Part shown: positions 13,501 to 59,702 of the stretch, one piece after another
Layout: every line of letters starts with the position of its first letter
How positions within the stretch are numbered: the stretch's first letter is position 1
Origin: Mobula hypostoma
Taxonomy: Eukaryota
Assembly: GCF_963921235.1 (NCBI RefSeq)
Contig: NC_086108.1
Span: 32,240,001-32,304,000, forward strand
DNA: 64,000 nucleotides
Direction: 5' to 3'
Made by a program: the position numbers and the translations under genes
The notes under the pieces: generated by a model
Told to the model about the DNA's origin: nothing
Database searches by the model: none
What the model saw: the letters and a program-made list of their open reading frames with translations, nothing else

Positions 13501-13869
13501 CAACCTGTATCCATAAGAGACGCAGTTAACCTTCATCTCTTGGCCACATTTTAATTCACTTCAACGCAACATATCTTCAATGAATTTCATGGAATAATAA
13601 GACAAAAGCACCAGGATTAAAAAAACCTCAAACATTTCGTCAGCAACAAAACAACATTACATAGCAGTCCTCTACTGAAGATGTAGAACAATTTTAAACT
13701 TAAATATATATTCAAGAACAAAAAGTGTTCAAAATGTAAAATAATTTTATTTTCTAATCTCATCTGATCAAAATTTTTCAGGTATTTGATTGACAGCTGC
13801 ATCAGCGTATCACCAGATACCCTGGGCACTATCTCCTCCATGTATCTGAAAAGCTGCTCTGAGACTAAG

Positions 13870-14705
13870 TGTGGATTCCAAACATCTGGAAACACAGTAG
13901 TTATGATATTCACCAGAAGACAGTTCCATAATATTTTGCATGGAACAGCATTAACCAATATACATGACTTTTTTGAACCTCATGATCCGGAGGAATTGTG
14001 GAAAATTCTCCTCAAATTTGGTTGCCAATGCTCAGAGTAGCGAAGAAACCATGATACTAACCGAATGGTGAAATGGTAGTTAACATCTCAGTAAAGAGTA
14101 GAATCAACTAAGGTTGCATCATTGGCCCAACATTTTTCTCAGTCTTTCCTATTGTAATGTTGCACCTCACCTCAAAGAAACTTCCTATGGGAGTGGAGCT
14201 AATCTTCAAAATTATTAGGAAACTGTTTAACTCACAGTGGCTCCTATCCAGAAACAAGGTCAAATTCTGTCAGTGGCCAAGTTCCAAAATCATATAACAC
14301 TTGCGTTTTGGGTACACTTGGAGAGTAACCTCCAGAGCATTGTCATTTTGTTCATCCAAGCATGAAAGGATGAGTGATACATTCTACATAGACTTCATCA
14401 ACAACAATAAGGATGTGCTCAAACCTTCTTTGAAGAAGTGCAACCACCCCACTGACTGGTGGGAAACTGCAGCTGACGATCACTCAAAGGGGGATTCAGG
14501 ATGTTATTAAGAACTTCAAGGACATGTTGAGAACAAAGAGATGCCTGATAAGAGGCAGAAGGAGAACACTAACTCATGTTCTACCCATCCACCCTCTACA
14601 TGCTTTATTGAAGATTCTGCTATTCCAAAGTGGCTTCATTTGCCACATCTGCTCCCATAAACCCAGAGCGGAAGGAAGTCCTCCTCGCTCCCGACAGACT
14701 GCCTA
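13870..14705 (+). mobile_element. Old RTE-like LINE remnant
   Basis: Decayed motifs QCGF, EELWKILLKFGC, gGCiiaPT-F and a terminal C-x2-C zinc-knuckle-like stretch. Confidence 0.5.
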
Positions 14706-16436: not shown

Positions 16437-17055
16437 GAGGTGTAGTGGAGAGTATATTGCCTGGCTGCATCACAGCCTGGTATGGAAACACCAATGCCCT
16501 AAACGTAAAAATTCTACAAATAGTAGTGGATACGGCACAGTCCGTCATAGGTAAAGCCCTCCTCAGCATTATCACAGGAAAGCAGCATCTAGCATCAGGG
16601 ACCCCCACCACCCAGGGTCCTTTCTCACTACTGCCATTAGGAAGAAGGTACAGGAGCCTCAAGGCTCACAGCACCAGGTTCAGAAACAGATATTAGCACT
16701 CAACAATCAGGCTCTTCAACCAAAGGGGATAATTTCACTCACCTTCACTTGCCCCATCACTGAAATGTTCTACAACCCATGGACTCACTTTCAAAGACTC
16801 TTCATCTCATGTTCTCGATGTTTACCGCTTATTTATTTATTTATTTATTTATTATTTCTTTCTTTTTGTATTTGCGTGGTTTGTTGTCTTTTGCAGACTG
16901 GTTGAACACACAAGTTGGTGAGGTCTTTCGTCGATCCTATTATGGTTATTATTCTATTGTGGATTAATTGAGTATGCCCGCAAGAAAACAAACCTCATGG
17001 TTGCATATGATGAAATTCATGTAGTTTGATAATAAATTTACTTTCAATTTTGAAC
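16080..17055 (+). mobile_element. Rex1/Babar-like LINE 3' fragment
   Basis: VESILPGCITAWYGN, FSLLPLGRRYRSLKAHSTRFRN and a tail aataaatttactttcaattttgaa. Same family at 24310-25050, 43720-44090 and 49320-49605. Confidence 0.8.
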
Positions 17056-17512
17056 AAGAATAGCCAGCACATTGAAATACCACCATACACAGGTTGCCCT
17101 TTAAGTTATACACATTCTTCATATTGAAATACATCCCCATCATCACTGGGTCAAAACCCTGAAATAGGGTTCTGCAATAAGATCTTTCATTAACAGGAGC
17201 TGCAACAGTTCAGATGGGCATTCACCATCTCCAACAAATTTCATTTCGAAGTGAACATAACTCCTCTTTTCTTTTTGCTCAAATCAAAAAAGATTCAAAG
17301 GTTTCTTGTACTAAAGAAAAACAAAGTAGACAAATGATGAAATGCAATTTGAGCAGCACACATGTACTTGAAGTAAACCCGTTGATTTAAGCAAATAGTG
17401 ATGAATGTTTGACGACTTCCAAGTTCATATCCCTGGTTAATGACACTGAAAGTCACTGCAAACAATAAACATTAATCTTTTTGTGTCTACATCTAATCCA
17501 GTGACCTAATTT

Positions 17513-22264: not shown

Positions 22265-22477
22265 CTTCATCTGCAAGTGTACGTATATAATGCAAGCCAT
22301 CTGCCAGAATCACCTTCATTCGATTGTCCTGGGAAAATTCAAACCACCTGGTCGCGACCTCCAACATCTCAGGATCGATTTCAATGGCATCAATGGTCGA
22401 CTGGGAGAAGAAGTCGTGAATAAACAATGGAAGGCTCCCACCGCCAAGGCCAATCACCAGCAGAGAGATCGCAGCAT
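22265..22477 (-). CDS. METTL13: METTL13 coding exon 6
   Basis: DAAISLLVIGLGGGSLPLFIHDFF...AIEIDPEMLEVATRWFEF...ADGLHYI (second SAM-binding GxGxG motif); 213 nt; canonical splice sites. Confidence 0.95.
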
Positions 22478-24309: not shown

Positions 24310-25050
24310 AAACTACATTGACCAAGTTACGAATTACGAAGAAAGCATGGCAGCGCCTCTACTTCCTTAAGAGTTTGCAAAAATTTGGCAGGGCTTCTAA
24401 AACTTTGACAAACTTCTATTGATATGCAGCGGAGGGTATACTGACTGGCTGCATCACAGCTTGGTATGGAAACACCAATCCCATTGAATGGAAAATCCTA
24501 CAAAAAGTAGTGGATATGGCCCAGTCCATCACAGGTAAAGACCTCTGCACCATTAAGCACATCTACATGAAATACTGTTGCAAGAAAGCAGCATCCATCA
24601 TCAGGGACCCCCACCACCCAAGACATGCTCTCTTGTCACTGCTGCCATCGGGAAGAAGGTACAGGAGCCTCAGGACTCACACCACCAGGTTCAAGAACAG
24701 TTATTACCCCTCAACCATCAGATTTCTTGATCAAAAGGGGATAACTTCACCTGCCCCATCATTGAAATGTTCCCACAACCTATTGACTCATTTTCAAGAA
24801 CTCTTCATCTCATGTTCTCGATATATATTGTTTATTTATTTATTATTATTTCTTCCTTTTTGCCTTTCCACTATTTGTTGTCTTTTGTACACCGGTTGAA
24901 CTCCCAAGTTGGTGCAGTCCTTCATTAATTCTGTGATGGTTATTATTCCATTATGGATTTATTGAGTATGCCCACAAGAAAATAAATTTCAGGGCAGTAT
25001 ATGGTGACATATCTGTACTTTGATTATAAATTTGCTTTGAACTTTGAAGT
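24310..25050 (+). mobile_element. Rex1/Babar-like LINE 3' fragment
   Basis: AASIIRDPHHPRHALLSLLPSGRRYRSLRTHTTRFKNSYYP; tail tttgaactttgaa. Confidence 0.85.
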
Positions 25051-32553: not shown

Positions 32554-34275
32554 GGAACATCTGCACAGCAAAGACACATACATCAGGATCCGTTACAGCT
32601 CGGCATTTATAGAACATAGAATAGTACAGCACAGTACAGGCCCTTCAGCCCACAATGTTGTGCCAACCCTCAAACCCTGCCTCCCATATACCCCCCCCCA
32701 CCTTAAATTCCTCCATTTACCCATCTAGTAGTCCCTTAAATTTCACTAGTGTATCTGCCTCCACCACTGACTCAGGCAGTGCATTCCATGCACCAACCAC
32801 TCTCTGAGTAAAAAACCTTCCTCTGATATCCCCCATGAACTTCCCACCCCTTATCTTAAAGCCATGTCATCTTGTATTCAGCAGTGGTGCCCTGGGGAAG
32901 AGGCGCTGGCTATCCACTCTATCTATTCCTCTTAATATCTTGTACACCTCTATCATGTCTCCTCTCATCCTCCTTCTCTCCAAAGAGTAAAGCCCTAGCT
33001 CCCTTAATCTCTGATCATAATGCATACTTTCTAAACCAGGCAGCATCCTGGTAAATCTCCTCTGTACCCTTTCCAATGCGTCCACATCCTTCCTATAGTG
33101 AGGCGACCAGAAATGGACACAGTACTCCAAGTGTGGCCTAACCAGAGTTTAACACCATCATCCCCACTGAACGAATCAGGAAACTCCAAGATCTGGGTCT
33201 CAATACTCCCTTGTGCAACTGGATCCTGGATTTCCTCACTTGTAGATCCCAGTCAATTCTGATCAGCAAAAGCACCTCCTCCACAGTCTCCATTGGCACA
33301 GCAGCACCACAAAGATGTGTAGTTAGCCCCCTGCTCTACTCACTTTACACCTATGACCGTGTGGCTAAGTACAGCTCCAACACTAATACAAGTTTGCTGA
33401 TGACACCACTGTTGTGGCCAGTATCAAAGGTGCCGATGAATCAGCATACAGAAGGCAGATTGAAAATTTGGCTGAGTTGTGTCATAACAACAACCTCTCG
33501 CTCAATGTCGTAAGACCAAGGAATTGATTGTAGACTTCAGGAGAGAGAAACCAGAGGTCCATGAGCCAGTAACCATCGGAGGATCAGAAGAGGAGAGGGT
33601 CAGTATCTTCAAATTCCTGGGTGTCACCGTCTCAGAGGACACATCCTGGACCCATCCTAAAAATATAATTGCAAAGAAAGCTCGATAGCGCCTCTAGTTC
33701 CTCAGGAGTCTGCAGGTATTCAGCATGTCATCAAAAATCCACGAAAACCTCGATAAATGTGTGCTGACTGGCTGCATTACAACCTGGTATGGGAACACCA
33801 ATGCCTTTGAGTGGAAAATCCTACAAAGGGTAGTGGATTTGGCCCAGTACATTACTAGTTAAACCCTCCAAACCATTGAGTACATCTACATGAAACATTG
33901 CCGTAGAATAGCAGCATCCATCATCAAAGGTCCTCACCACCCAGGCCATGCTCTTTTCTCAGTGCTGCTATTAGGTAGAAGGTACAAGTCCCTCAAAACT
34001 CATACCACCAGGTTCAAGATAGCTACTACTCATAGCTACACTCATTTAAGGACTCTTTTTTCTTGTTATTTCATACTCATTATTTATTGCTATTTACTTA
34101 TTATCTGCATTTGCACAGTTTGTTTACACTTTACAGTTCCTGATGTTTACAGTTTACATATCCTGTTTATAGTTACCATTCTATAGATTTGCTAAATATG
34201 CCCACAGACAAATACTCTCAGCTTTGTATATGGCGGCATGTATGTACTCTGATAATAAGTTTTATTTTGAACTTT
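32554..34275 (+). mobile_element. Rex1/Babar-like LINE inserted in CR1 and itself interrupted by a CR1
   Basis: EHL.SKDTYIR...YSSAF stops at ~32608 and resumes as NTIIP at ~33151. Continues CNWILDFLT...[14 protein letters not shown]. Confidence 0.85.
32610..33150 (-). mobile_element. Young 5'-truncated CR1 LINE
   Basis: Clean ORF EYCVHFWSPHYRKDVDALERVQRRFTRMLPGL...RMRGDMIEVYKI; tail (tagaaca/tagaatag). Confidence 0.9.
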
Positions 34276-47923: not shown

Positions 47924-48236
47924 GCCTTGAATGTGTCCTCGAGCTTTGCAGTGACCCCCAAACATTAATGCACCTCAAGCTACTCGATCAAAACAAAAAT
48001 TCATGTCGTTCATGTGTGATACCCAACTGTCCGGACATACTCTTTCAAGCCAAGAAGGGAGTCATACTGTCTGCAGGCAGACAATCGATCTCGATTGCAC
48101 AAAGCATCCACTAGAAAGTGTTAATAGATTCTTCCCTTGAATCGAAAATACAAACAGAAAAGGAAACGAACAGAATTTTTTAAAGCACTCAAACAATACT
48201 GAATTTCCATAGAGTACAATTAGATAATGACTGTAC

Positions 48237-48389
48237 CTTTTCTTTGGGCTTAATATACTTGTGCAGCACTGCGCAATGATCCACATAGGTCCCATACCAC
48301 TCAAACGCACTTCCACCCCGCTTCTTGAAGAACGTCTCCCAATATTCAGCAGAACTGAACTCTTTCGAAGACTTCGGCAGCAAATTCAT
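48237..48389 (-). CDS. METTL13: METTL13 (eEF1A lysine and N-terminal methyltransferase) coding exon 1
   Basis: MNLLPKSSKEFSSAEYWETFFKKRGGSAFEWYGTYVDHCAVLHKYIKPKEK|gtacag; 153 nt. Probable acceptor ctaatttctgaag| 8 nt upstream of the ATG. Confidence 0.97.
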
Positions 48390-49927
48390 TTTCAATCCTT
48401 CAGAAATTAGACACAACTTGTTAACACTTTCCAATTTATTTCATTTTTCTATATGTTTCTAATGCCCACTTTTCAGTCAACAACAGCGTGACAAATCAAA
48501 TGAAAAATCTCAAAATTACTCACCTACAATAATGAGGCCACACTGGTTTTTTTTGTAAAATGTGTAGGTATTCAAACATATGTCCTTTAGTACAGAAACT
48601 ACAGATTTGGTTTTTTAAGGGCCACTCTGAATTAGATACGCAAAGCTAATACTCGAAGTTTTACAGCACTATTTTCTTTGGGATGTTAATGAATTGGGGG
48701 AAACAGGCTTATCATCTTTACATGACAAAATAACTATTCTCTGGCCAACCTGAAAATTTGATACAACACAAAGCATTTTTTTTAAACAAACTGGGATAGT
48801 GAATCAAGGGGCATGAAAGTAAGTCTCCTTTGGCAGATCCAAAGTTACGTAAAGGGAAAAATCAGGATTAAAATGTGTAAGATAAATTATTAAAATAAAA
48901 ATGCTGACAATTCAACAAGCTGTCCAGTCTGAGTTCCTCACTGGTAAAGCCTCAATGGTTCTGGTTCACTCAGGCTGAGCCTGTGCTTTGCTTCATGGGA
49001 TTTTGTTCAGATCAACACCATCACATCCCAATGTCCTAAGCAGAAACAGCAACCATCTTAGCACAATAAAATCTTCAAAGTGAAGCACATACTTCACAGA
49101 CTTACAAGGACAGGAAATATGTTATTAAAATAAAGTCACTTCTTCTATGTGTTGCCTTAAAAAGCACAATACTCACATAACCTGCTGGGATAAAGATGCA
49201 AACTGGCATACAAACCCTGGCCAGTTTAGAGCTGGATGGAGGAATATTGTTGCTGACAGGACTCCGGAAAAATCTGTTCCATACTTTAGATAATCAAAAC
49301 TGATTCCAACAAAAAAACACCTCAGTGACATCACTTGCCCTATCATTGAAATAGACTCACTTCCAAGGACTCTTCATCTCATGTTCTCAATATCTATTGC
49401 TTATTTATTTAATATTATTATTTCTTTCTTTTTGTATTTGCACAATTTGTTGTCTTCTGCACGCTGGTTGAAAGCGGACTTTCATTGATCCTGTTACAGT
49501 ATAGTTATTATTCTGTAGATTTTTTGAGTATGCTCACAAGAAAATGACTATCAGGGTTGCATATGGTAACATATGTACTCTGACAATAAATTTACTTTGA
49601 ACTTTTTCAACATACTCCCCAACTGGCCCCAAACGGAAGCCAGATAATAAAAAGCAGCACTTCCAATGACAGCAGGAAAGCCTGTGCCATGGGGCTACAA
49701 CAGAACACGTCTCAGGCAAAGGTCAATGTCCAACAGCACTTCACCGTTACCCAGACACTTGTGCCTCACTGCACACTAAGGTCCTGCAGGAGTTGAGCTA
49801 ACAGGAACTATCTAACCTACATGACTGCACCCCAGAACCAATGACACCCCAACATCAGCAATTGCCGGCATTTACACACACACACACACACACAAAGACC
49901 GAGTTCCAAGCCATGGTCAGATTTTCA

Positions 49928-50410
49928 ACTGAAGCATGTGAGAAGATGTGCCTTCCACCCAACATCCACAAAGTCAAGGTCCACTGCCAACTTGCCCGTC
50001 AGATCAATCTATCCTCCGGACAACAGGGTAGCACCACCAGCCCAGAGATTCTGGTTAGACTCAGTAAGCCATGCTGGGAAAGCCAGATTGGTTATCCGCC
50101 CGACACCAGATTCCCAAAGCAGGCACTCTATTCTGAACTTTGATATTGAAGCAGATTTTCAGAAGGACAGAGAAAAAGATTCAAGGATAATCTAAACCAT
50201 AGAAAAACTCCCACTTCTCACTGGCCATGAGTACTTAAAGTGCACCATCTCATAAACACCCTGACTAGCCACACCATGCACCTCCAACCCCATGGTGTGG
50301 AATGTCTGTGGTTCCCACATTAGCCGAATTAGTCACTTCCGAACCCATAGACCTGCAGAAGAGACAAATTATTCTTTCCCACTGACTAACTCTACTGGGG
50401 AATAAATCAT
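49928..50410 (+). repeat. Left arm of an inverted duplication (decayed RTE-like LINE 3' end)
   Basis: PDTRFPKQALYSEL motif; near-identical to the reverse complement of 56839-57397. Confidence 0.9.
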
Positions 50411-51204
50411 CATCCAAAAGCATGTGTTCTATTTTACTTCTGCTTTGCCAATACCATGACATTGTTTCAATGGCGTTGATATTCTGTAGAATGTGTCACT
50501 ACAGGCAGCTGTGGAGGCTAAGTCTTTATGTACAAACGTATATTTTAGGGAGAGGTTGATAGATTCTTGATTAGTCTGGACATGAAAGGATATGGGGAGA
50601 AGGCAGGAGAATCGGTCGTGATGAAATGGCCTAAAACTGTTCCTGTATCATATGGTCTTATAGCAATTATAGTCATGGAAATTCTCTCGGATTTATAAAT
50701 ACACAAGAAATCTTTCATTATCTGGCCCTTCCTGATATACCCCTTTTCCCCCCAAATACTCTCATTCCTGTCTTTTCTCGTCCCCCACTGCTAACAAACA
50801 CACTTCTACCTTTCTGATGAACTGTTATGATGAGAGACTATTAACCAGAACCATTAACTGATTCTCTCTCTACAAATACTGTATTTCTCATTTTATGCTT
50901 TTTTTCCAAATCACTAAATGCAACAATGTCGATCTTCATCAAATCTATAGTTTATTGCTCATAGATAAACTATAGATATGCAAAAAAAATTAAGCTGCAT
51001 ATCCTAAAAAAAACAGGCACTGAAATCGTTAACTTTCTTTTTGCAGTAATTTACTAAACTGATAACCCAATCTTCGCCTCAATATTTATTATTTTTCCAT
51101 AAGAATTTTCTCCTACTAAACTTCTGCAGAAATTTTTGAAAGAGAAAGGTGTAACCACCAGAAAAACCTTTAATTTTAGATTGTAACTGCGTTTGGTCTA
51201 TTAC

Positions 51205-51290
51205 CTGCTTCGCTATCGCTACTCCAGTCCCTTCTCACTCACTCAGTCACACAACGTGCCGTGCAGAGACTATTCCAATCCAGGTCAAGG
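51205..51290 (-). other. METTL13: Probable non-coding first exon of METTL13 (5' boundary approximate)
   Basis: Minus-strand donor CAG|GTAATA at 51205 next to the CpG-containing promoter. The ATG exon is AT-rich with no promoter of its own. Confidence 0.55.
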
Positions 51291-51456
51291 TTCCAATGCA
51301 CCTGATTGGACCGCCGACCGGTCTCCGAATGCATCCATTGGTTGACATGTCGCAGGGAAGGGTGACGCCACTATCAACAACCAATCCGTGAGGGACTCCT
51401 GCTCTTACCCGGAAGCGTTTTCCGCTATTGGAATCCCTGGCAAGATCAAAGATGGC
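51270..51456. promoter_or_regulatory. Bidirectional METTL13/ITPA promoter
   Basis: CCAAT/ATTGG at 51275, 51293, 51305, 51337, 51381 and 51427; TGACGCCA at 51363; CCGGAAG at 51409; YY1-like AAGATGGC at 51449; local CpG retention. Confidence 0.75.
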
Positions 51457-51514
51457 TGGGAAACAAGTCGGAAACGTGGTATTTGTTACCGGTAATGCTA
51501 AGAAACTGGAAGAG
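51452..51514 (+). CDS. ITPA: ITPA (inosine triphosphate pyrophosphatase) coding exon 1
   Basis: MAGKQVGNVVFVTGNAKKLEE|gtaggt; the FVTGNxxKLEE motif is the Ham1/ITPase N-terminal signature. Confidence 0.93.
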
Positions 51515-52928
51515 GTAGGTAGGGCTGCTTTATTCTAAAATCTAATAGTTTTCCCATCGGTTTATAATTTCTTGGTGTTTGGTACTGGGTTGCGGAATTC
51601 CAGGAATAAGTTTCAGAATGTTGAACATCAATTAAAACTCAATGCAATGCCAGTCATTGACGGGGATACCCAAAAAGATAAAATGTTGGGGTGATACCTT
51701 TTTACTGTTAGAGTGTTGGAATAGGCTGTACGGCCCACGATGAGCTAATTAAGCTGATGTCTCCTAATTCCTTCTGCCTGCACATGGTCCGTATCCTTCC
51801 ATTCTCTGCATATTCAAGTGTTAAGAGTCGCTTAAACGGCTCTGCTGTGTCTGAGTGCAAAATAAGCTTGTCCTGTGTATCTCCTTTGAACTTCCCACCT
51901 TAGATGCGTGTCCTCTAGTTTTGACCATAGAATTGATAAAAATGCCTAATCTATTTTTGCCTCTTTTAATTCTATAAACTTCTATCGGTCTTTCATCGGT
52001 ATCAACTGCTCCAGAAAAAAAAACAACCCACGTCTGTCCAGCCCCTCGTTATAGCAAATGCTCTCTAATCCAGACAGTATCCTGGTAAATCTCTTTCTCC
52101 ACCTCCTCCATAGTCTCCACATTCTTCCTCTCATTGGGTGACCAGAGTTGGATGCTGCACTCCAAAACTGACCTAACCAGAGCTTCATAAAGCTGCAACA
52201 CAACTACCTTAACCAATTCCCCGTTCACTTATGAAGAATTTATCTGTCATTAGAAAGGAGGATTCTATGAATAAGAGGTTTAGAAAGGTGGTCAGTGATA
52301 ATGTTAACTTGAAATGTGGATCATAATGATTGACAAGGGCAAGTGGTAGGCCAGGTGACAGGGAATTTTCAGCTCCAGCAGTCAAATACCAAAAATCTCA
52401 TAAGGAAGTAAATGGCATTTGAAGAGATGAAACATAACAACAGGGGTTCCCAACCTTTTTTATGCCATGGACCCCTACCATTAACTGAGGAGTCTGTGGA
52501 TCCCAGGCTGGGAACCCTGCATTAGCAGGTGAAGCCTGAATTAACAGCTTAAAGGATTGGAGGAAGTACAAAGACTGAAAGCGCATAGGAAATAAAGTTG
52601 AAGTAGGTGGGTCCTTTTCTGACTGTCACAAGTGGAGTACCACAGGAATTGGTTTTTGCCCTTCATTTGCTTAAAGTTTATGTTAATACCCTGGGGGTGG
52701 GAACAAACTGGAAGGTTCCGAATGTGCTGCTGATACAAAATTAGGTGGAAGTGTGCGGTGATAGGGAGATTCTGTTTCTGCTGTAGGATCCAGGAAGAGT
52801 GAATAGGTCAAAACCTGGCGATGAGTGAGGTCATGCAGTTCAGTTACAGCTGTGGTTACCGCCCCCTTGTCTCCCAGACCAAATCCCCAGCGCCCTCCTC
52901 TCCATTGCATAAAAACTATAAAGAATTT

Positions 52929-55662
52929 TAGAAACACAGAAAACGTACAGCACAATACAGGCCCTTCGGCCCACAAAGCTGTGCCGAACATGTCCCTACC
53001 TTAGAACTACCTAGGCTTACCTATAGCCCTCTATTTTTCTAAGCTCCATGTAGCCATCGAGGAGTCTCTTAAAAGACCCTATGGTTTTCGTTTCCGCCTC
53101 CACCACTGCCACCGGCAGCCCATTCCACGCACTCACCACTCTGCGTTTTAAAAAAACTTACCCCTGACATCTCCTCTGTACCTACTCCCTTAAAGCTATG
53201 CCCACTTGTGCTAGCCATTTCAGCCCTGGGGAAAAGCGTCTGACTATCCACACGATCAATGCCTCTCATTATCTTGTATACCTTTATCAGGTCACCGCTC
53301 ATCCTCTGTCGCTCCAAGGAGAAAAGGCCAAGTTCACTCAACCTCTTCTCATAAGGCATGCTCCCCAATCCAGGCAACATCCTTGTAAATGTCCTCTGCA
53401 CCCTTTCTATGGTTTCCATGTCCTTCCTATAGGGAGGCAACCAGAACTGAGCACAGTACTCCAAGTGGGGTCTGACCAGGGTCCTATATAGCTGCAACAT
53501 TACCTCTTAATCTCAATCCCACGATTGAAGGCCAATGTACTGTATGCCTTCTTAGCCACAAAGTCAACCTGCGTAGCAGCTTTTAGTGTCCTATGGACTC
53601 GGACCCCAAGATCCCTCTGATCCCCCACACTGCCAAGAGTCTTACCATTAATGCTATATTCTGCCGCCATATTTGACCAACCAAAATGAACCACCACACA
53701 CTCATCTGGGTTGAACTCCATCTGCGACTTCTCAGCCCAATTTTGCATCCTATCAACGTCCTGTTGTAACCTCTGACAGCCCTCCACACTATCCACAACA
53801 CCCCCAACCTTTGTGTCATCAGCAAATTTACTAACCTATCCCTCCACTTCCTCATCTAGGTCATTTATAAAAATCACAAAGAGTAGGGGTCCCAGAACAG
53901 ATCCCTGAGGCACCCCACTGGTGACTGACCTCCATGCAGAATATGACCTGTCTACAACTACTCTTTGCTTTCTCTGGGCAAGCCAGTTCTGGATCCACAA
54001 AACAATGTCCCCTTGGATCCCATGCCTTCTTACTTTCTCAATAAGCCTTGCATGGGGTACCTTGTCAAATGCCTTGCTGAAATCCATATACACTACATCT
54101 ACTGCTCTACCTTCATCAATGTGCTTAGTCACATCTCAAAAAATTCAATCAGGCTGGTAAGGCATGACCTACCTTTGAACAAAGCCATGCTGATGATTCC
54201 TAGTCACATTATGCCTCTCCAAATGTTCATAAATCCTGCCTCTCAGGATCTTTTTCATCAACTTACCAACCACTGAAGTGAGACTCACTGGCCTATAATT
54301 TCCTAGGGTACCTCTACTCCCCTTCTTGAATAAGGGAACAACATCCGCAACCCTCCAATCCTCCAGAACCTCTCCCGTCCTCATTGATAATGCAAAGATC
54401 ATTGCCAGAGGCTCAGCAATCTCCTCCCTCAATTCCCACAGTAGCCTGGGGTACATCCCGTCTTGTCCCGGTGACTTCTCCAACTTGATGCTTTCCAAAA
54501 GCTCCAGCCCATCCCCTTTCTTAATATCTACATTCTCAGGCTTTTCAGTCCACTGCAAGTCATCCCTACAATCGTCACGATCCGTTTCCGTAGTGAATAC
54601 TGAAGCAACGTATTCATTAAGTACCTCCACTATTTCCTCCGGTTCCATACACACTTTTCCATTGTTACACATAATTTGTCCTATTCTCTCACGTCTTATC
54701 CTCTTACTCTTCACATACTTGTAGAATGCCTTGGGGTTTTCCTTAATCCTGTCCGCCAAGGCCTTCTCATGGCCCTTCTGGCTCTCCTAATATCATTCTT
54801 AAACTCCTTCCTGCTAGACTTATAATCTTCTAGATCTCTATCATTACCTAGTTTTTTGAACCTTTTACGCGCTTTTCTTTTTGACTAAATTTACAGCAGC
54901 CTTTGTACACCACAGATCTTGTATCCTACCATCTTTTCCATGTCTCATTGGAATGTCCCTACTCAGAACCCCACGCAAATACCCCCTGAACATTTGCCAC
55001 ACTTCTTCTGTATGTTTCCCTGACAACATCTGTTTCCAATTTATGCTTCCAAGTTCCTGCCTGATAGCCTCGTATTTCCCCTTACTCCAATTAAACATTT
55101 CCCTAACTTGTCTGTTCCTATCCCTCTCCAATGCTATGGTAAAGGACATAGAATTGTGATCACTATCTCCAAAATGCTGTCCCACTGAGAGACCTGACAC
55201 CTGACCAGGTTCATTTCCCCAATACCAGATCAAGTACAGTATCTCCTCTTGTTGGCTTACATATTGTGTCAAGAAACCTTCCTGAACACACCTAACAAAC
55301 TCTACCCCATCTAAACCCCTCACTCTAGGGAGATGCCAATCGATATTTGGGAAATTAAAATCTCCGAACACAACAACCCTGTTATTATTACTCCTTTCCA
55401 GAATCTGTCTCCTTATCTGCTCCTAGATGTCGCTGTTACTATTGGGTGGTCTATAAAAAACACCCAGTAGAGTTATTGACCCCTTCCTATTCCTACCTTC
55501 TACCCACAGAGACTCTGTAGACAACCCCTCCATGACTTCCTCCTTTTCTGTAGCCGTGACACTATCTCTGATCAACAGTGCCATGCCCCCACCTCTTTTG
55601 ACTTCCTCCCTATCTTTTCTGAAATATCTAAAGCCTGGCACTTGAAGGAGCCATTCCTGCCC
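52929..55662 (-). mobile_element. CR1 LINE (same subfamily as 4793-7626), pseudogenised, in ITPA intron 1
   Basis: [45 protein letters not shown] and LVRPHLEYC motifs on the minus strand; same 3' UTR. Confidence 0.95.
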
Positions 55663-55859
55663 ATTTTGATCTACAATGCACAGTGAAAGAAAATAGGAAC
55701 TGTAAATTCAAAGCAGTGACAAATAATTGCAAATATTCAAATCTATTTAAAGCTGCAAATAACATTATTTCTTCAATTTCAGTAAAAACAATTTTCATTA
55801 ACAATTTTAGAGTGTACGTTAGTAGTCCAACTATTCACTATTTCATTGCTTTTTCACCT

Positions 55860-56480
55860 TTCAATGAGATGGATGGGCTTGGTGCAGTGATATCAGCTTC
55901 TCAATATCAGGCTGAATGTCACTCAGATGGAGTCTCAGATCCCCAAGTTCAGTAAGTTGCAATCTGTTTTGTTGCTTTGAAAGAAGTTGGGTGACTGCAC
56001 TGATGCCGTGCTCCACTAAGCATAATGTTGGAAAGGCCCTAAAGAAGATCGTGGCGTTTTCCCACAGTTCAAGATGGTGTTCAGAGATTTCTTTCTGCAA
56101 CCAATTATTTTTTAAACCCTGGTTTCAGCTCAAAAGTTATTTTGTAGTGAGATCAGTTCTTCCTCCATCCTTCCTGTTAGTTCCTCATTATAAGTGTTCT
56201 GGAATGGATCTATTACCCAATCTGGAATTTGGATCAAGGGAAGATTCTGGAATTTCTCTGATGTGACTTTATGCAGCTCACCCAGGTGGGCACAGTATAC
56301 TTGAAGATCATCATCTGGTATTCTTCCTTTCTCTTCCAACTCGAGGAGGCTTGGAAATTGCAAAAGGTCGGGACAGCCAATATTGCACGTAATTAGGGTT
56401 AGCTTGGATGGAAATGTAGAGACCACTGGTTTGACTTTGATAATATTCACATCATTTTTCTGCAATTGAAGATTAGCAGA
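55860..56480 (-). mobile_element. hAT (Charlie/Buster, SCAND3-like) transposase C-terminal remnant
   Basis: IPDWVIDPF...EELISLQ, AFPTLCLVEHGISAV..LLSK..NRL...GDLRL...QAHPSH*; frameshifted. Confidence 0.8.
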
Positions 56481-56838
56481 AAAATGATGATGCTGATTGG
56501 TTCATGAACTAAATGATTGAAGGCATCTAGCTGACTTGTAACCTGGCGCTGTGTGGCTTCAGGCTTCTGTACCCCTTCCCCAATGGTAGCTGTGAGAAGA
56601 TGGCATGATCCGGGTGGTGGGGATCAATCATTCACATAAACATCAAAAGTTGTAGTGATTTGCTTTCTGTCTCTCACCAGTTGCCTTCAGATTACAGAGA
56701 ACCTCCTGCCCAATGCTTTCTACCAGGAGACAAGAAAGAGTTCCAGTACTTTGGGAGCACCATGGTGTAGTGTGTGGTCATACTGGCCTGTTTCAAAGGA
56801 TAATATGGCAGTAGAGTCTCTTCCAAAAATCCAGATTT

Positions 56839-57397
56839 ATGATTTATTCCCCAGCAGAGTTAGTCCCTGGGAAAGGATAATTTGCCTCTTCTGCAGGTCT
56901 ATGGGTTCAGAAGAGACTAATGGGGCCGATGTGGGAGCCACAGACTTTCCACACCATGGGGTTGGAGGTGCATGGTGTGGCTAGTCAGGGTGTTTATGAG
57001 ATGGTGCTCTGCATATGCAGAATCTCAGTGTGCCGTCAATGTGTGTCTCGAGGTACTCAATAACAGGCCAAGTTCTTCATCGCCACTTTAAGTGCTCATG
57101 GCCAGAGAGAAGTGGGAATTTTGTTATGATTTAGATTATCCTTGAGTCTTTTTCTCTGTCCTTCTGAAAATCTGCTTCAATATCAAAGTTCAGGATAGAG
57201 TGCCTGCTTTGGGAACCTGGTGTCGGGCATAGACCAATCTGGCTTTCCCAGCATGGCTTACTGAGTCTAACCAGAATCTCTGGGCTGGTGGTGCTACCCT
57301 GTTGTCCGAAGGATAGATTGATCTGACGGGCAAGTTGGCAGTGGACCTTGACTTTGTGGATGTTGGGTGGAAGGCACATCTTCTCACATGCTTCAGT
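56839..57397 (-). repeat. Right arm of the inverted duplication
   Basis: Reverse complement of 49928-50410, plus ~76 extra nt. Confidence 0.9.
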
Positions 57398-57617: not shown

Positions 57618-57675
57618 GTTGTTCAAATTCTAGGTGACAAGTTTCCTTTCACACTTGTTTCCAAAAAGATTGACT
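57618..57675 (+). CDS. ITPA: ITPA coding exon 2
   Basis: aacag|VVQILGDKFPFTLVSKKID|gtaag; 58 nt. Confidence 0.95.
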
Positions 57676-57763: not shown

Positions 57764-57828
57764 TACCAGAGTACCAGGGTGAGCCAGATGAAATTTCAAT
57801 AAAGAAATGTCAGGAAGCAGCTCGAGAG
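57764..57828 (+). CDS. ITPA: ITPA coding exon 3
   Basis: ctccag|[22 protein letters not shown]|gtacgt; 65 nt, after an 88-nt intron. Confidence 0.95.
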
Positions 57829-59702
57829 GTACGTGCTCATCACAGATTCTTATCGTCTGCTCAGAGTGCTTATGAATGAATCATTACATAATTTTCCAAA
57901 AAGTGTACAATAGCTAGGATTCTTTAAATTGTTTATTTGTTTAGGTAATGTGGACATACCGACCATGATTCAAGATTATCCATCCCTAAGTGCCACCTCT
58001 GTTGAGAGACAGTAGAGAGTTGATGGGCCAGCAATCAGTTGTGGGCCAGACAGAGTAGGGATGGTAGATTTCTTTTCCTGAAAAACACTGGAGAACCAGA
58101 AGGGGTTTCAAAACAAGCCTGTAGTTTTTTGGCTGATGTACAGATGCCAGTCGAGTACAATGACTCTAGTACTATATGGCTGATTTTATACAGTTCTCTA
58201 ATACTACTATAATTTTTATGCCATTGTTTTCACTACTTTATATTTTCTATATTGTGTATGTTCTTCACATTTCACTCTTGGGTGTGCAGAATGACTGGGC
58301 AATTGTTTCATAAGCCTTTGCTGCACAGATGCTGTTGGTTTGCCATTTAAGTTATCGGACTAGTAATCCAGGGAACTGTGTAAACAACTCAGTGACCCAA
58401 GTTCAAACCCACCAAGACAGCCGTGAAATTAAAATTCAATTAATGACCTACAATTTATGCACTGGAAAAATAAAATTCTAAGCAGTCTGTAACTAAAAAG
58501 AGCATGAAATCCTCCCAGGTTGTGATATTACCTATCTGCTTCACTAAAAATCTTCAGGAGAGAAGATCTGCTACCCTTGCCCAGCGTGGGCTATACACGT
58601 TTCCAGATAAGCCCCACGTGGCTGATTCTGAAATGAAGTGGTCTGACGTGCTATGCATTTTGACCAGTACTGCTCCGACAAGGAAGTGCCTAACCACCCA
58701 CCTGTCTCTCTCAGTGGCATTATCATCATCAGGTCTTCTGTCATCTATATCTTGGAAGTTTCCATTGACCAGAAAACGTAACTAGATCAGTTACATTAAT
58801 AATGTGGCAACAGGAATGGATTCGAGGCTGGTTATCCTGCAGTGAATGATTCATTTTCCGACAGCCCAGGGCCTTTCTGCCATCTGCAGTGCATGTACTG
58901 TAATATTCTCCATTTGCCTGGATGAGTGTAATGTTCAGCAACCCTCAAGGAGCTCAGTGCCATCCGGGACAGAACAGCCCTTTTGATTGTCATCCCATCT
59001 ACCATCCTAAGCATTCATCCCTTCTCGGCGTCTTCAGCTTGTAGCATCCCAAAAAAAGGCACCGTGGTTATTCGCCCAAGCTACTCTGGTGGCAGCTCCC
59101 AAGCCCAGCAAACCTGCCATCACAAAGGGCAAGGGCTGCAGCTGCACAGTGGCACCGCCACCCGCAGGTTCCCCTCCGAGATGACCATCATCCTGACTAG
59201 GGAAATGCACCGCAGGTCCTTCATTTCACTGGGCCAGAATCCCGCAGTTCCTTACCCGGCAACACTCTACAGCTTGCACCAGTTCAAGAAGGCAGATAGC
59301 CATCGCTTTCTCAAGAGCAATTCAGTCTGGGCAATAAACGCAATGGTACTGTTACTGGCCGGAGCCTAAAATGGAGTTTGAAAATGCTAAGTACAATGGA
59401 GTTCGTGATTCCACAGACCTGAACTTTCATCTGCTAGTACTTGTTTTATGGTGTTCACCTCTGCCCAGAGGACATAGTCCAGCCAGTGTTCCAGGTAGGT
59501 GTTTCATCAGCTGCTATCTGTAGCTGTTTTTCATCATAAAAGTCAGGTGATGGAAAGGGTAATTTGCCAAGAGAGCCAAACTGCTGGGAGTCTCTACAGC
59601 ACAATAAACAAATGGTAGTGAATTCCAATCTTAAGCTAATATGAAGACCTCGAATTATAGCTACATAGTGAAATTTAACAGATATCAACTTTATTTCTTT
59701 AG

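What the first reader, a model, noticed from the sequence alone, without database searches (positions are those of the whole stretch)
49928..57397. Near-identical ~0.5-kb inverted repeats bracket the shared promoter and both first exons
Seen: 49928-50410 and 56839-57397 are inverted copies. The outer ~160 bp differ at one position, the inner part is more diverged, and there is one ~76-nt indel. Both copies share the same decayed RTE-like frame, which argues for local duplication or gene conversion rather than two insertions. The enclosed 6.4 kb holds the bidirectional promoter, ITPA exon 1 and the probable METTL13 non-coding exon 1, so each gene has the same element in the same relative orientation in its first intron. 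Inference: recombination between the arms would flip the promoter and swap first exons. ITPA exon 1 spliced to the 48397 acceptor reads ...GAG GAT TGA AA ATG, making a uORF that ends 2 nt before the METTL13 start, while ITPA would lose its ATG. Uneven identity along the arms suggests past exchange between them.
Basis: partly seen in the sequence, partly recalled or inferred. Interest (0 to 1): 0.72.

Follow-up and report, generated by a model that had tools for sequence, protein, structure and literature searches.

The report
Old inverted repeat pair flanking ITPA/METTL13 promoter
Two inverted copies of one decayed half-kilobase retroelement-like fragment sit in the first introns of the head-to-head genes METTL13 and ITPA; they are a low-copy local pair shared with related species that still exchanges sequence, and nothing shows that they flip the promoter.

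Summary
49928-50410 and 56839-57397 are inverted copies: 23 mismatches in 481 aligned bases, 1 of them in the outer 165, plus one 77-nt indel and sharp ends. Both arms are antisense to their host gene.

New here:
- Contigs of public runs show the arms are low copy. Summed word depth is about 6-30, against about 6 for unique flanks and 1e5-1e6 for neighbouring interspersed repeats. This is not an ordinary dispersed family.
- A related species (B) has the left arm at the same site, and two arm versions that merge into one contig at double depth.
- That merged contig carries three B-specific substitutions, where both arms of species A carry the other letter. This is concerted evolution, meaning the arms have exchanged sequence by gene conversion.

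The inversion and exon-swap idea has no support. Only the reference linkage is seen, in the assembly and in one contig of a second sample. The longest uninterrupted identity is 88 nt. Flipping would separate ITPA from its ATG exon. The short contigs could not have shown a rare inverted allele.

The RTE label and the METTL13 non-coding exon 1 remain unverified. The scan has no earlier finding of this on other DNA. Overall: an ordinary but well-documented small palindrome.

The parts
49928..50410 (+). Left arm (483 nt). The decayed reading frame runs on the + strand, so it is antisense to METTL13, in whose first intron (as modelled) it lies.
   Evidence: Species B contig 49576-49973 bridges its outer junction (record 18).
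56839..57397 (-). Right arm (559 nt). The frame runs on the - strand, so it is antisense to ITPA, in ITPA intron 1, ending 220 nt upstream of exon 2.
   Evidence: A 1082-nt contig of run X12 carries all 10 right-arm-specific letters and the 3 gap letters (record 9).
49928..50092 (.). Outer homogenised tract of the left arm. Its partner is 57233-57397. 165 nt with 1 mismatch; the longest exact run is 88 nt.
   Evidence: In species B the merged tract reaches at least 49944-50207.
57008..57084 (.). 77-nt segment present only in the right arm. The left arm joins 50241 directly to 50242.
50092..50097 (.). Small indel cluster that ends the near-identical tract in species A. Species B contigs carry the right-arm state.
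   Evidence: table 4.
50411..56838 (.). 6428-nt interior holding the promoter region, ITPA exon 1, several high-copy interspersed repeats and a reverse-transcriptase-bearing LINE.
51452..51514 (+). ITPA exon 1 coding part (MAGKQVGNVVFVTGNAKKLEE), phase 0, followed by a GT donor.
   Evidence: PDB ITPA residues 5-24, E 0.02. Depth 84.5 in the possible RNA run X12.
57618..57675 (+). ITPA exon 2.
   Evidence: The next exon, 57764-57829, matches ITPA residues 45-65 at E 3e-7.
48237..48397 (-). First coding exon of METTL13 (AG acceptor before 48397, ATG at 48389).
   Evidence: Depth in X12 falls from 13.8 to 0.08 at the acceptor. Gene identity rests on the downstream exon 22326-22469 against PDB 5wcj, E 8e-20.
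51275..51431 (.). Cluster of six CCAAT/ATTGG boxes just upstream of the ITPA ATG; the likely core promoter.
   Evidence: 6 in 157 bp against 165 in 64000 window-wide, so about 0.4 expected.

Best explanation
The two arms are paralogous copies of one already-decayed ~0.56-kb fragment, probably the 3' end of a LINE: the tail of ORF2 plus a short 3' UTR. One local event placed them in opposite orientation 6.4 kb apart, in the first introns of the divergently transcribed genes METTL13 and ITPA. That event predates the split of species A and B and probably predates more distant relatives. Since then the copies have evolved as a miniature palindrome. Non-crossover gene conversion between the arms keeps the outer ~165-280 bp nearly identical within each species. 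The inner part, interrupted by a small indel cluster and a 77-nt deletion in the left arm, diverges. The pair is most likely selectively neutral. Shown: it is low copy, the left arm is orthologous in species B, and the outer part evolves in concert. Inferred: the origin by local DNA copying, the neutrality, and the absence of crossovers.
For: (1) The partner is the only match in 64 kb. (2) Contig word depth on the arms is 6/31.5/15.8 in A, 17/60/39 in B and 14/50/22 in C. Unique flanks give about 6, 10 and 7, and adjacent interspersed repeats give 1e5-1e6 (table 2). At 50197-50208 species A shows exactly two versions, 4.6 + 4.6 (table 3). (3) Both copies have identical 5' and 3' ends and shared stop codons, and there is no homology beyond the ends. 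(4) Species B contig 49576-49973 crosses the outer-left junction. B also has a contig over 49944-50179 at depth 18.7, twice its unique depth, which forks at 50208 into 12.8 + 9.4. So B has two paralogues that are identical over at least 264 nt. (5) At 49980, 50011 and 50063 all B depth carries a derived letter, whereas both A arms and the laid C contigs carry the other letter (table 3). That pattern needs exchange between the arms after the A/B split. (6) Identity along the arms is uneven (p=0.007). (7) Right-arm 31-mers occur at shares that fit single-locus neutral divergence: B 0.50-0.54, D 0.21, G 0.14. (8) B-specific change in the arm (3 in 236 nt) is close to that in the flanks (1.7-2.8%), so there is no sign of constraint (table 8).
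Against: Depth from contigs is only a proxy for copy number, and the tool itself warns against reading it as one. The middle bin (50000-50199) is 4-7 times unique depth, so a few further relatives at 85% identity or more may exist. The position of the right arm in species B and C was not seen, because only 48200-54199 could be laid. The concerted-evolution signal rests on three sites in one contig. Both arms end exactly where a retroelement 3' end would be expected. That fits a retrotransposition-type origin at least as well as an arbitrary DNA patch. No convincing target-site duplication was found for either arm.
Confidence: 0.68

Rival explanations
1. Both arms were made at once by retrotransposition. 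Two reverse-transcription events, primed from the two 3' ends of the interior segment, copied the same short, already-decayed RNA to its 5' end. This concerns origin only; the later gene conversion would be as in the best explanation.
For: Both arms have their presumed 3' ends (AATAAA...ATAAATC) facing the interior and their 5' ends outward. That is the geometry expected if the interior's two 3'-OH ends served as primers. Identical 5' ends would follow from a common short template. The middle bin has a little excess depth, which leaves room for a source copy elsewhere.
Against: The arms could not be shown by any tool to be LINE-derived. No target-site duplications or other junction signatures were found. 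No source copy was identified. The event would need two breaks 6.4 kb apart.
Confidence: 0.15
2. Two independent insertions of an ordinary dispersed non-autonomous element family that happen to lie 6.4 kb apart.
For: Sharp common ends in both copies, as expected for a discrete mobile unit. Both are antisense to their host genes, the usual bias for intronic retroelements.
Against: Depth on the arms is five orders of magnitude below the real interspersed repeats next to them. There is no other copy in 64 kb. Arm 31-mers are found only in a handful of related organisms, at shares that fit single-locus divergence. Two hits of a rare element within 7 kb of a large genome are very unlikely.
Confidence: 0.05
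3. The arms drive recurrent inversion of the 6.4-kb promoter cassette, a flip-flop as in the yeast chromosome XIV region, and the homogenised outer tract is the footprint of crossovers.
For: The inverted geometry is right. Exchange between the arms is demonstrated. Retroelement pairs of this size have caused inversions in primates (PMC2603318). A yeast inverted repeat kept homogeneous by conversion does flip repeatedly (PMC9731477).
Against: Only the reference linkage is seen, in the assembly and in the second-sample contig (record 9). The longest perfect identity is 88 nt, and 134 bp already gives a 20-fold drop in mouse cells (PMC2583991). The inverted state separates ITPA exon 1, with its ATG and the conserved FVTGNAKK motif, from exons 2 onward. 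That would be a null allele of a conserved housekeeping gene. Conversion without crossover explains the data.
Confidence: 0.06
4. The inverted duplication is the scar of an ancient inversion formed by staggered breaks. That mechanism copies the sequence between the paired nicks to both ends of the inverted segment.
For: This mechanism produces exactly an inverted duplication with sharp ends flanking the inverted piece. It was inferred for 17 of 29 Drosophila inversions (PMC1885836).
Against: The pre-inversion state would have had ITPA exon 1 pointing away from the rest of ITPA, which is not viable for a conserved gene. The duplicated piece ends where a retroelement 3' end would be expected, a coincidence under arbitrary breaks.
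Confidence: 0.04

Closest known systems
Arm-to-arm gene conversion in palindromes and inverted low-copy repeats (sex-chromosome palindromes; primate Y ampliconic genes, PMC4772468)
   Same: Two inverted copies on one chromosome. Identity within a species is higher than between orthologues in the converted tract. Exchange occurs without a visible rearrangement.
   Different: The arms here are about 0.5 kb, not tens of kilobases or more. They are non-coding decayed repeat sequence and only partly homogenised. The spacer holds a promoter and two first exons.
Yeast chromosome XIV flip/flop region (PMC9731477)
   Same: An inverted repeat is kept homogeneous within each species over long times and flanks a unique segment.
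   Different: The yeast repeat is 4 kb of expressed genes, both orientations are observed, and inversion is harmless. Here only one orientation is seen, the perfect tracts are 88 nt or less, and inversion would break ITPA.
Retrotransposon recombination-mediated inversion, RRMI (PMC2603318)
   Same: Substrate geometry: two inverted retroelement copies a few kilobases apart, some of them around exons.
   Different: RRMI uses independent insertions of abundant families (L1, Alu) and is defined by an observed inversion between species. Here the pair is a low-copy local duplicate and no inversion is observed.
Inverted duplications at inversion breakpoints made by staggered breaks (PMC1885836)
   Same: An inverted duplicate of a short, locally unique sequence with sharp ends.
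   Different: It requires the enclosed segment to have been inverted at the time of origin. The gene structure here argues against that.

Membership tests
Low-copy inverted repeat (small palindrome) evolving in concert | Two copies in inverted orientation on one chromosome, each the other's best match in the genome | tested here: met
   Depth on the arms is about 1-5 times unique depth at 85% likeness or more, against 1e5-1e6 on neighbouring repeats. There are exactly two versions, 4.6 + 4.6, at 50197-50208 in species A. This is a proxy, not a whole-genome BLAST.
Low-copy inverted repeat (small palindrome) evolving in concert | Lineage-specific substitutions shared by both arms of one species | tested here: met
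   At 49980, 50011 and 50063 all B depth (18.7 of 18.7, twice unique depth) is derived, while both A arms carry the other letter. The contig forks into 12.8 + 9.4 at 50208. Only three sites.
Low-copy inverted repeat (small palindrome) evolving in concert | Both arms at orthologous positions in related species | tested here: inconclusive
   The left outer junction is bridged in B (record 18). Only k-mer shares are available for it.
Dispersed non-autonomous retroelement family | Many genomic copies of similar identity with the same ends | tested here: not met
   depth table. No further copy in the window. Few holders among public runs.
   The arms hold only a tail region. HMMER of the 68-aa 5' frame against 1.8e9 representatives returned two unrelated repeat proteins. 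The resemblance of MPDTRFPKQALY...GQRKRxKD...C..CG....S.I..ISHFRTHR to LINE ORF2 tails is recalled from memory, not tested. The clade is unassigned.
   Both arms end ...GGGGAATAAATCAT, and the right arm continues with a second ATAAATC. Only a weak candidate duplication was found for the right arm (TTAAATGG / ATAAATCTGG) and none for the left. No family consensus was available.
Invertible (flip-flop) segment driven by recombination between inverted repeats | Both orientations observed among individuals, cells or species | tested here: not met
   Only the reference linkage is seen, in the assembly and in contig record 9 of a second sample of species A. Short-read contigs cannot exclude a rare alternative.
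Invertible (flip-flop) segment driven by recombination between inverted repeats | Uninterrupted identity long enough for efficient recombination | tested here: not met
   The longest exact run is 88 nt (49928-50015). Reducing uninterrupted homology from 232 to 134 bp cut recombination 20-fold in mouse cells (PMC2583991).

The most novel reading that the evidence does not exclude
The arms mediate occasional germline or somatic inversion of the shared promoter cassette. This would create an allele or cell state in which the ITPA promoter and exon 1 drive METTL13 behind a short upstream ORF and ITPA is silenced. The species-specific homogenisation of the outer arms would be the trace of such crossovers.
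Probability: 0.04. Interest if true: 0.75.

Novelty: new member of a known kind. Interest (0 to 1): 0.25.

Why it matters
If the reading is right, this is a compact and datable example of concerted evolution between very short (0.5 kb) inverted repeats in a vertebrate-type genome. The conversion tract has a visible boundary at an indel, and the orthologous locus is present in several related species. That makes it a convenient natural system for measuring how short and how imperfect a repeat can be and still undergo gene conversion. It is also a cautionary case: an inverted pair around a promoter does not imply a switch. It does not change what is known about ITPA or METTL13, and it gives no evidence of a regulatory role.

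Tried and rejected
1. Extended duplication: a word-7 BLAST of the 2.6-3 kb beyond each arm end found nothing. The unit is discrete.
2. DNA transposon with long terminal inverted repeats spanning 49928-57397: rejected. There is no direct repeat at the outer flanks, the interior holds conserved host exons, and the arms carry a decayed protein frame.
3. Target-site duplications: only 5-mers or one gapped 8-10-mer. Uninformative.
4. Classifying the arms as LINE or RTE failed.
   - phmmer of 57193-57396(-) against 1.8e9 representatives gave two irrelevant hits, a tandem-repeat ORF and a Sushi-repeat protein.
   - The conserved-looking pieces are 15-26 aa between stops, too short for the tools by reference.
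   - A decayed element at about 13.8-14.7 kb with a similar tail motif gave no Pfam hit.
   - tblastn of the arm pieces found no relative in the window.
5. The look-up of encoding contigs with two arm ORFs: nothing on record.
6. Rfam and tRNA scans of 47-59 kb: nothing, so no SINE head or structured RNA.
7. The search of earlier findings by place, words and sequence: only this same finding and an unrelated hammerhead note.
8. PDB search with the METTL13 N-terminal exon gave only noise. Identity was obtained from the C-terminal domain exon instead.
9. Chimeric 51514>48397 or 51205>57618 junctions: not among the 15 joints shown for run X12, and 1612 more joints were not shown. No statement is possible.
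10. RNA pairing between the two pre-mRNAs: rejected on sequence grounds. Both transcripts contain the same (antisense) strand of the element, so they are not complementary.
Full report
OBSERVATION

- The repeat finder gives three collinear inverted pairs covering 49928-50410 and 56839-57397: 165 nt at 99%, 145 nt at 94% and 172 nt at 92%.
- BLASTN of 49400-50900 against the whole window finds only the partner (E 4e-145 and 2e-67).
- A global alignment has 481 aligned columns with 23 mismatches. Only one mismatch (50016/57309) lies in the outer 165 nt. There is a small indel cluster at 50092-50097 and a 77-nt segment present only on the right (57008-57084).
- A maximum chi-square permutation test supports uneven identity along the arms (p=0.007).
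- Similarity ends abruptly at both ends of both arms. A word-7 BLAST finds nothing further in the 2.6-3 kb beyond them.

GENE CONTEXT

- ITPA exon 1 (51452-51514, MAGKQVGNVVFVTGNAKKLEE, GT donor) matches solved ITPA residues 5-24 (E 0.02).
- ITPA exon 2 starts at 57618. The next exon matches ITPA residues 45-65 (E 3e-7).
- On the minus strand, the exon 48397-48237 starts after an AG acceptor and has its ATG at 48389.
- The downstream exon 22326-22469 matches the solved METTL13 C-terminal domain (5wcj, E 8e-20). The N-terminal methyltransferase exon at about 44645-44971 hits a related methyltransferase.
- Six CCAAT boxes lie in 51275-51431, where about 0.4 are expected from the window-wide density. 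This fits a promoter just upstream of ITPA.
- The proposed non-coding METTL13 exon 1, ending at 51205, could not be verified. In the possible RNA run X12 the depth is 84.5 on ITPA exon 1 and 13.8 on the METTL13 ATG exon. It falls to 0.08 just past the 48397 acceptor and is 0 at 51200-51399.
- The decayed frame of the left arm is on the plus strand and that of the right arm on the minus strand. Both arms are therefore antisense to their host gene, the usual orientation of intronic retroelements.
- Because of this, the two pre-mRNAs carry the same strand of the element. They are not complementary to each other.

WHAT THE ARMS ARE

- Both copies share stop codons and frame breaks, for example ...PDTRFPKQALY.EL*Y*SRFSEGQRKR.KDNLN...WP*. 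The sequence was therefore already decayed when it was copied.
- From memory, these motifs and the ending C..CG....S.I..ISHFRTHR resemble the C-terminal tail of LINE ORF2 proteins. That tail is followed by about 60 nt of 3' UTR with an AATAAA.
- I could not confirm this with a tool. A library-wide HMMER search with the 68-aa 5' frame returned only two unrelated repeat proteins. The better-conserved pieces are too short to search by reference. The RTE label is therefore unverified.

LOW COPY, NOT A DISPERSED FAMILY

Contigs of four public runs were laid on 48200-54199 at 85% likeness or more.
- Unique flanks have summed word depth of about 4-7 in species A (X1), about 9-10 in species B (X5) and about 6-8 in species C (X9).
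- The three bins covering the arm give 6/31.5/15.8 in A, 17/60/39 in B and 14/50/22 in C.
- Interspersed repeats next to the arm (49200-49799, 50411-50790) give 1e5. The reverse-transcriptase-bearing LINE at about 52930-55650 gives 1e6.
- At 50197-50208 species A shows exactly two versions at 4.6 + 4.6.
- These depths are not strict copy numbers. But the gap of five orders of magnitude means the arm is not an ordinary family, and its partner is by far its closest relative.
- The middle bin leaves room for a few more relatives.
- Right-arm 31-mers are held only by species A (0.91-0.95), B (0.50-0.54), D (0.21) and G (0.14), apart from a 0.04 trace in one skin metagenome run. These shares fit single-locus neutral divergence of about 2%, 5% and 6%.

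AGE AND EXCHANGE

- A species B contig (49576-49973) bridges the outer-left junction, so the left arm is orthologous in B.
- B also has a contig over 49944-50179 at depth 18.7, twice its unique depth. The next contig, at depth 22.2, forks at 50208 into 12.8 (T, right-like) and 9.4 (C, left-like).
- B therefore has two paralogues that are identical over at least 264 nt.
- On that merged contig, 49980, 50011 and 50063 carry B-specific letters in all the depth. Both arms of A, and the laid contigs of C, carry the other letter (table 3).
- Without exchange between the arms after the A/B split, this would need six parallel mutations. With exchange it needs three mutations and one conversion tract. 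This is the signature of concerted evolution.
- B-specific change in the arm (3 in 236 nt) is close to that in the flanks (1.7-2.8%). There is no sign of constraint.

INVERSION

- Recombination inside the arms leaves all four arm-flank junctions unchanged. It changes only the linkage between a flank and the arm-specific inner variants.
- Short-read contigs break in the shared 88- and 76-nt tracts, so they mostly cannot test orientation.
- There is one exception. A 1082-nt contig of run X12, from a different sample and study of species A, aligns to 49928-50242. It carries exactly the 10 mismatches and 3 gap letters that distinguish the right arm.
- That alignment starts at contig position 216, and the preceding 215 nt do not match the left flank (record 9). 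This is the reference linkage in a second sample.
- The longest perfect identity between the arms is 88 nt. In mouse cells, reducing uninterrupted homology from 232 to 134 bp already cut intrachromosomal recombination 20-fold (PMC2583991).
- Inverted retroelement pairs have caused inversions between human and chimpanzee (PMC2603318). A yeast inverted repeat that is continually homogenised does flip (PMC9731477). The geometry is therefore permissive.
- An inverted allele here would separate ITPA exon 1, with its ATG and the FVTGNAKK motif, from the rest of the gene.
- I rate recurrent inversion as unlikely (about 5%) and a regulated switch as very unlikely. Gene conversion without crossover explains what is seen.

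ORIGIN

Origin is unresolved.
- I favour a local copying event. The two copies share ends and decay, and two hits of a rare element within 7 kb are very improbable.
- A rival is a double reverse-transcription event primed from both 3' ends of the interior segment. It fits the inward-facing presumed 3' ends.
- An origin by a staggered-break inversion (PMC1885836) would produce this structure. But it would require a non-viable earlier arrangement of ITPA.
- No convincing target-site duplications were found.

VERDICT

The reading as a local duplication with exchange between the arms is supported and strengthened by cross-species data. The promoter-flip reading is unsupported. This is a new instance of a known kind: a small inverted low-copy repeat under gene conversion. 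It is of modest interest.

Noticed in passing
window 52930-55650 (- strand): A LINE with a reverse-transcriptase domain (Pfam RVT_1, E 1.7e-15, on 53839-54132) lies inside ITPA intron 1, within the enclosed segment. Its summed word depth is about 1e6 in all three species' DNA runs and about 1e5 in the possible RNA run. It is one of the most abundant repeats of these genomes.
   Followed up: partly
window 49200-49799, 50411-50790, 52000-52199, 52441-52600: High-copy interspersed repeats (word depth 1e4-1e5). Two of them abut or nearly abut the left arm. 49351-49612 has diverged copies at 16779-17056, 24782-25045 and 34160-34275. No tRNA or Rfam head was found.
   Followed up: partly
window 51205-51452: METTL13 and ITPA, which as I recall lie on different human chromosomes, appear head to head here, with a CCAAT-rich region of about 250 bp before the ITPA ATG. 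The proposed non-coding METTL13 exon 1 ending at 51205 has no contig support in the one possible RNA run (depth 0 at 51200-51399).
   Followed up: partly
window 49866-49906: A (CA)n microsatellite lies 21 nt outside the outer end of the left arm. The reads tool skipped it as a repeat where reads seem cut.
   Followed up: no
window 13800-14700 (+ strand): A heavily decayed retroelement remnant. From memory, its motifs resemble a LINE reverse transcriptase (…LWKILLKFGC…, …GCIIGPTFFS…LFNSQ…) followed by a tail motif KDVLKPSLKKCNHPTDWWE. It may be a distant relative of the family that gave the arms. There was no Pfam hit and no significant match to the arms.
   Followed up: partly
window 50340 / 56909: At a CpG the left arm keeps CGA (Arg, in ...ISHFRTHR) where the right arm has TGA (stop). 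This is one of the few frame differences that arose after the duplication.
   Followed up: no
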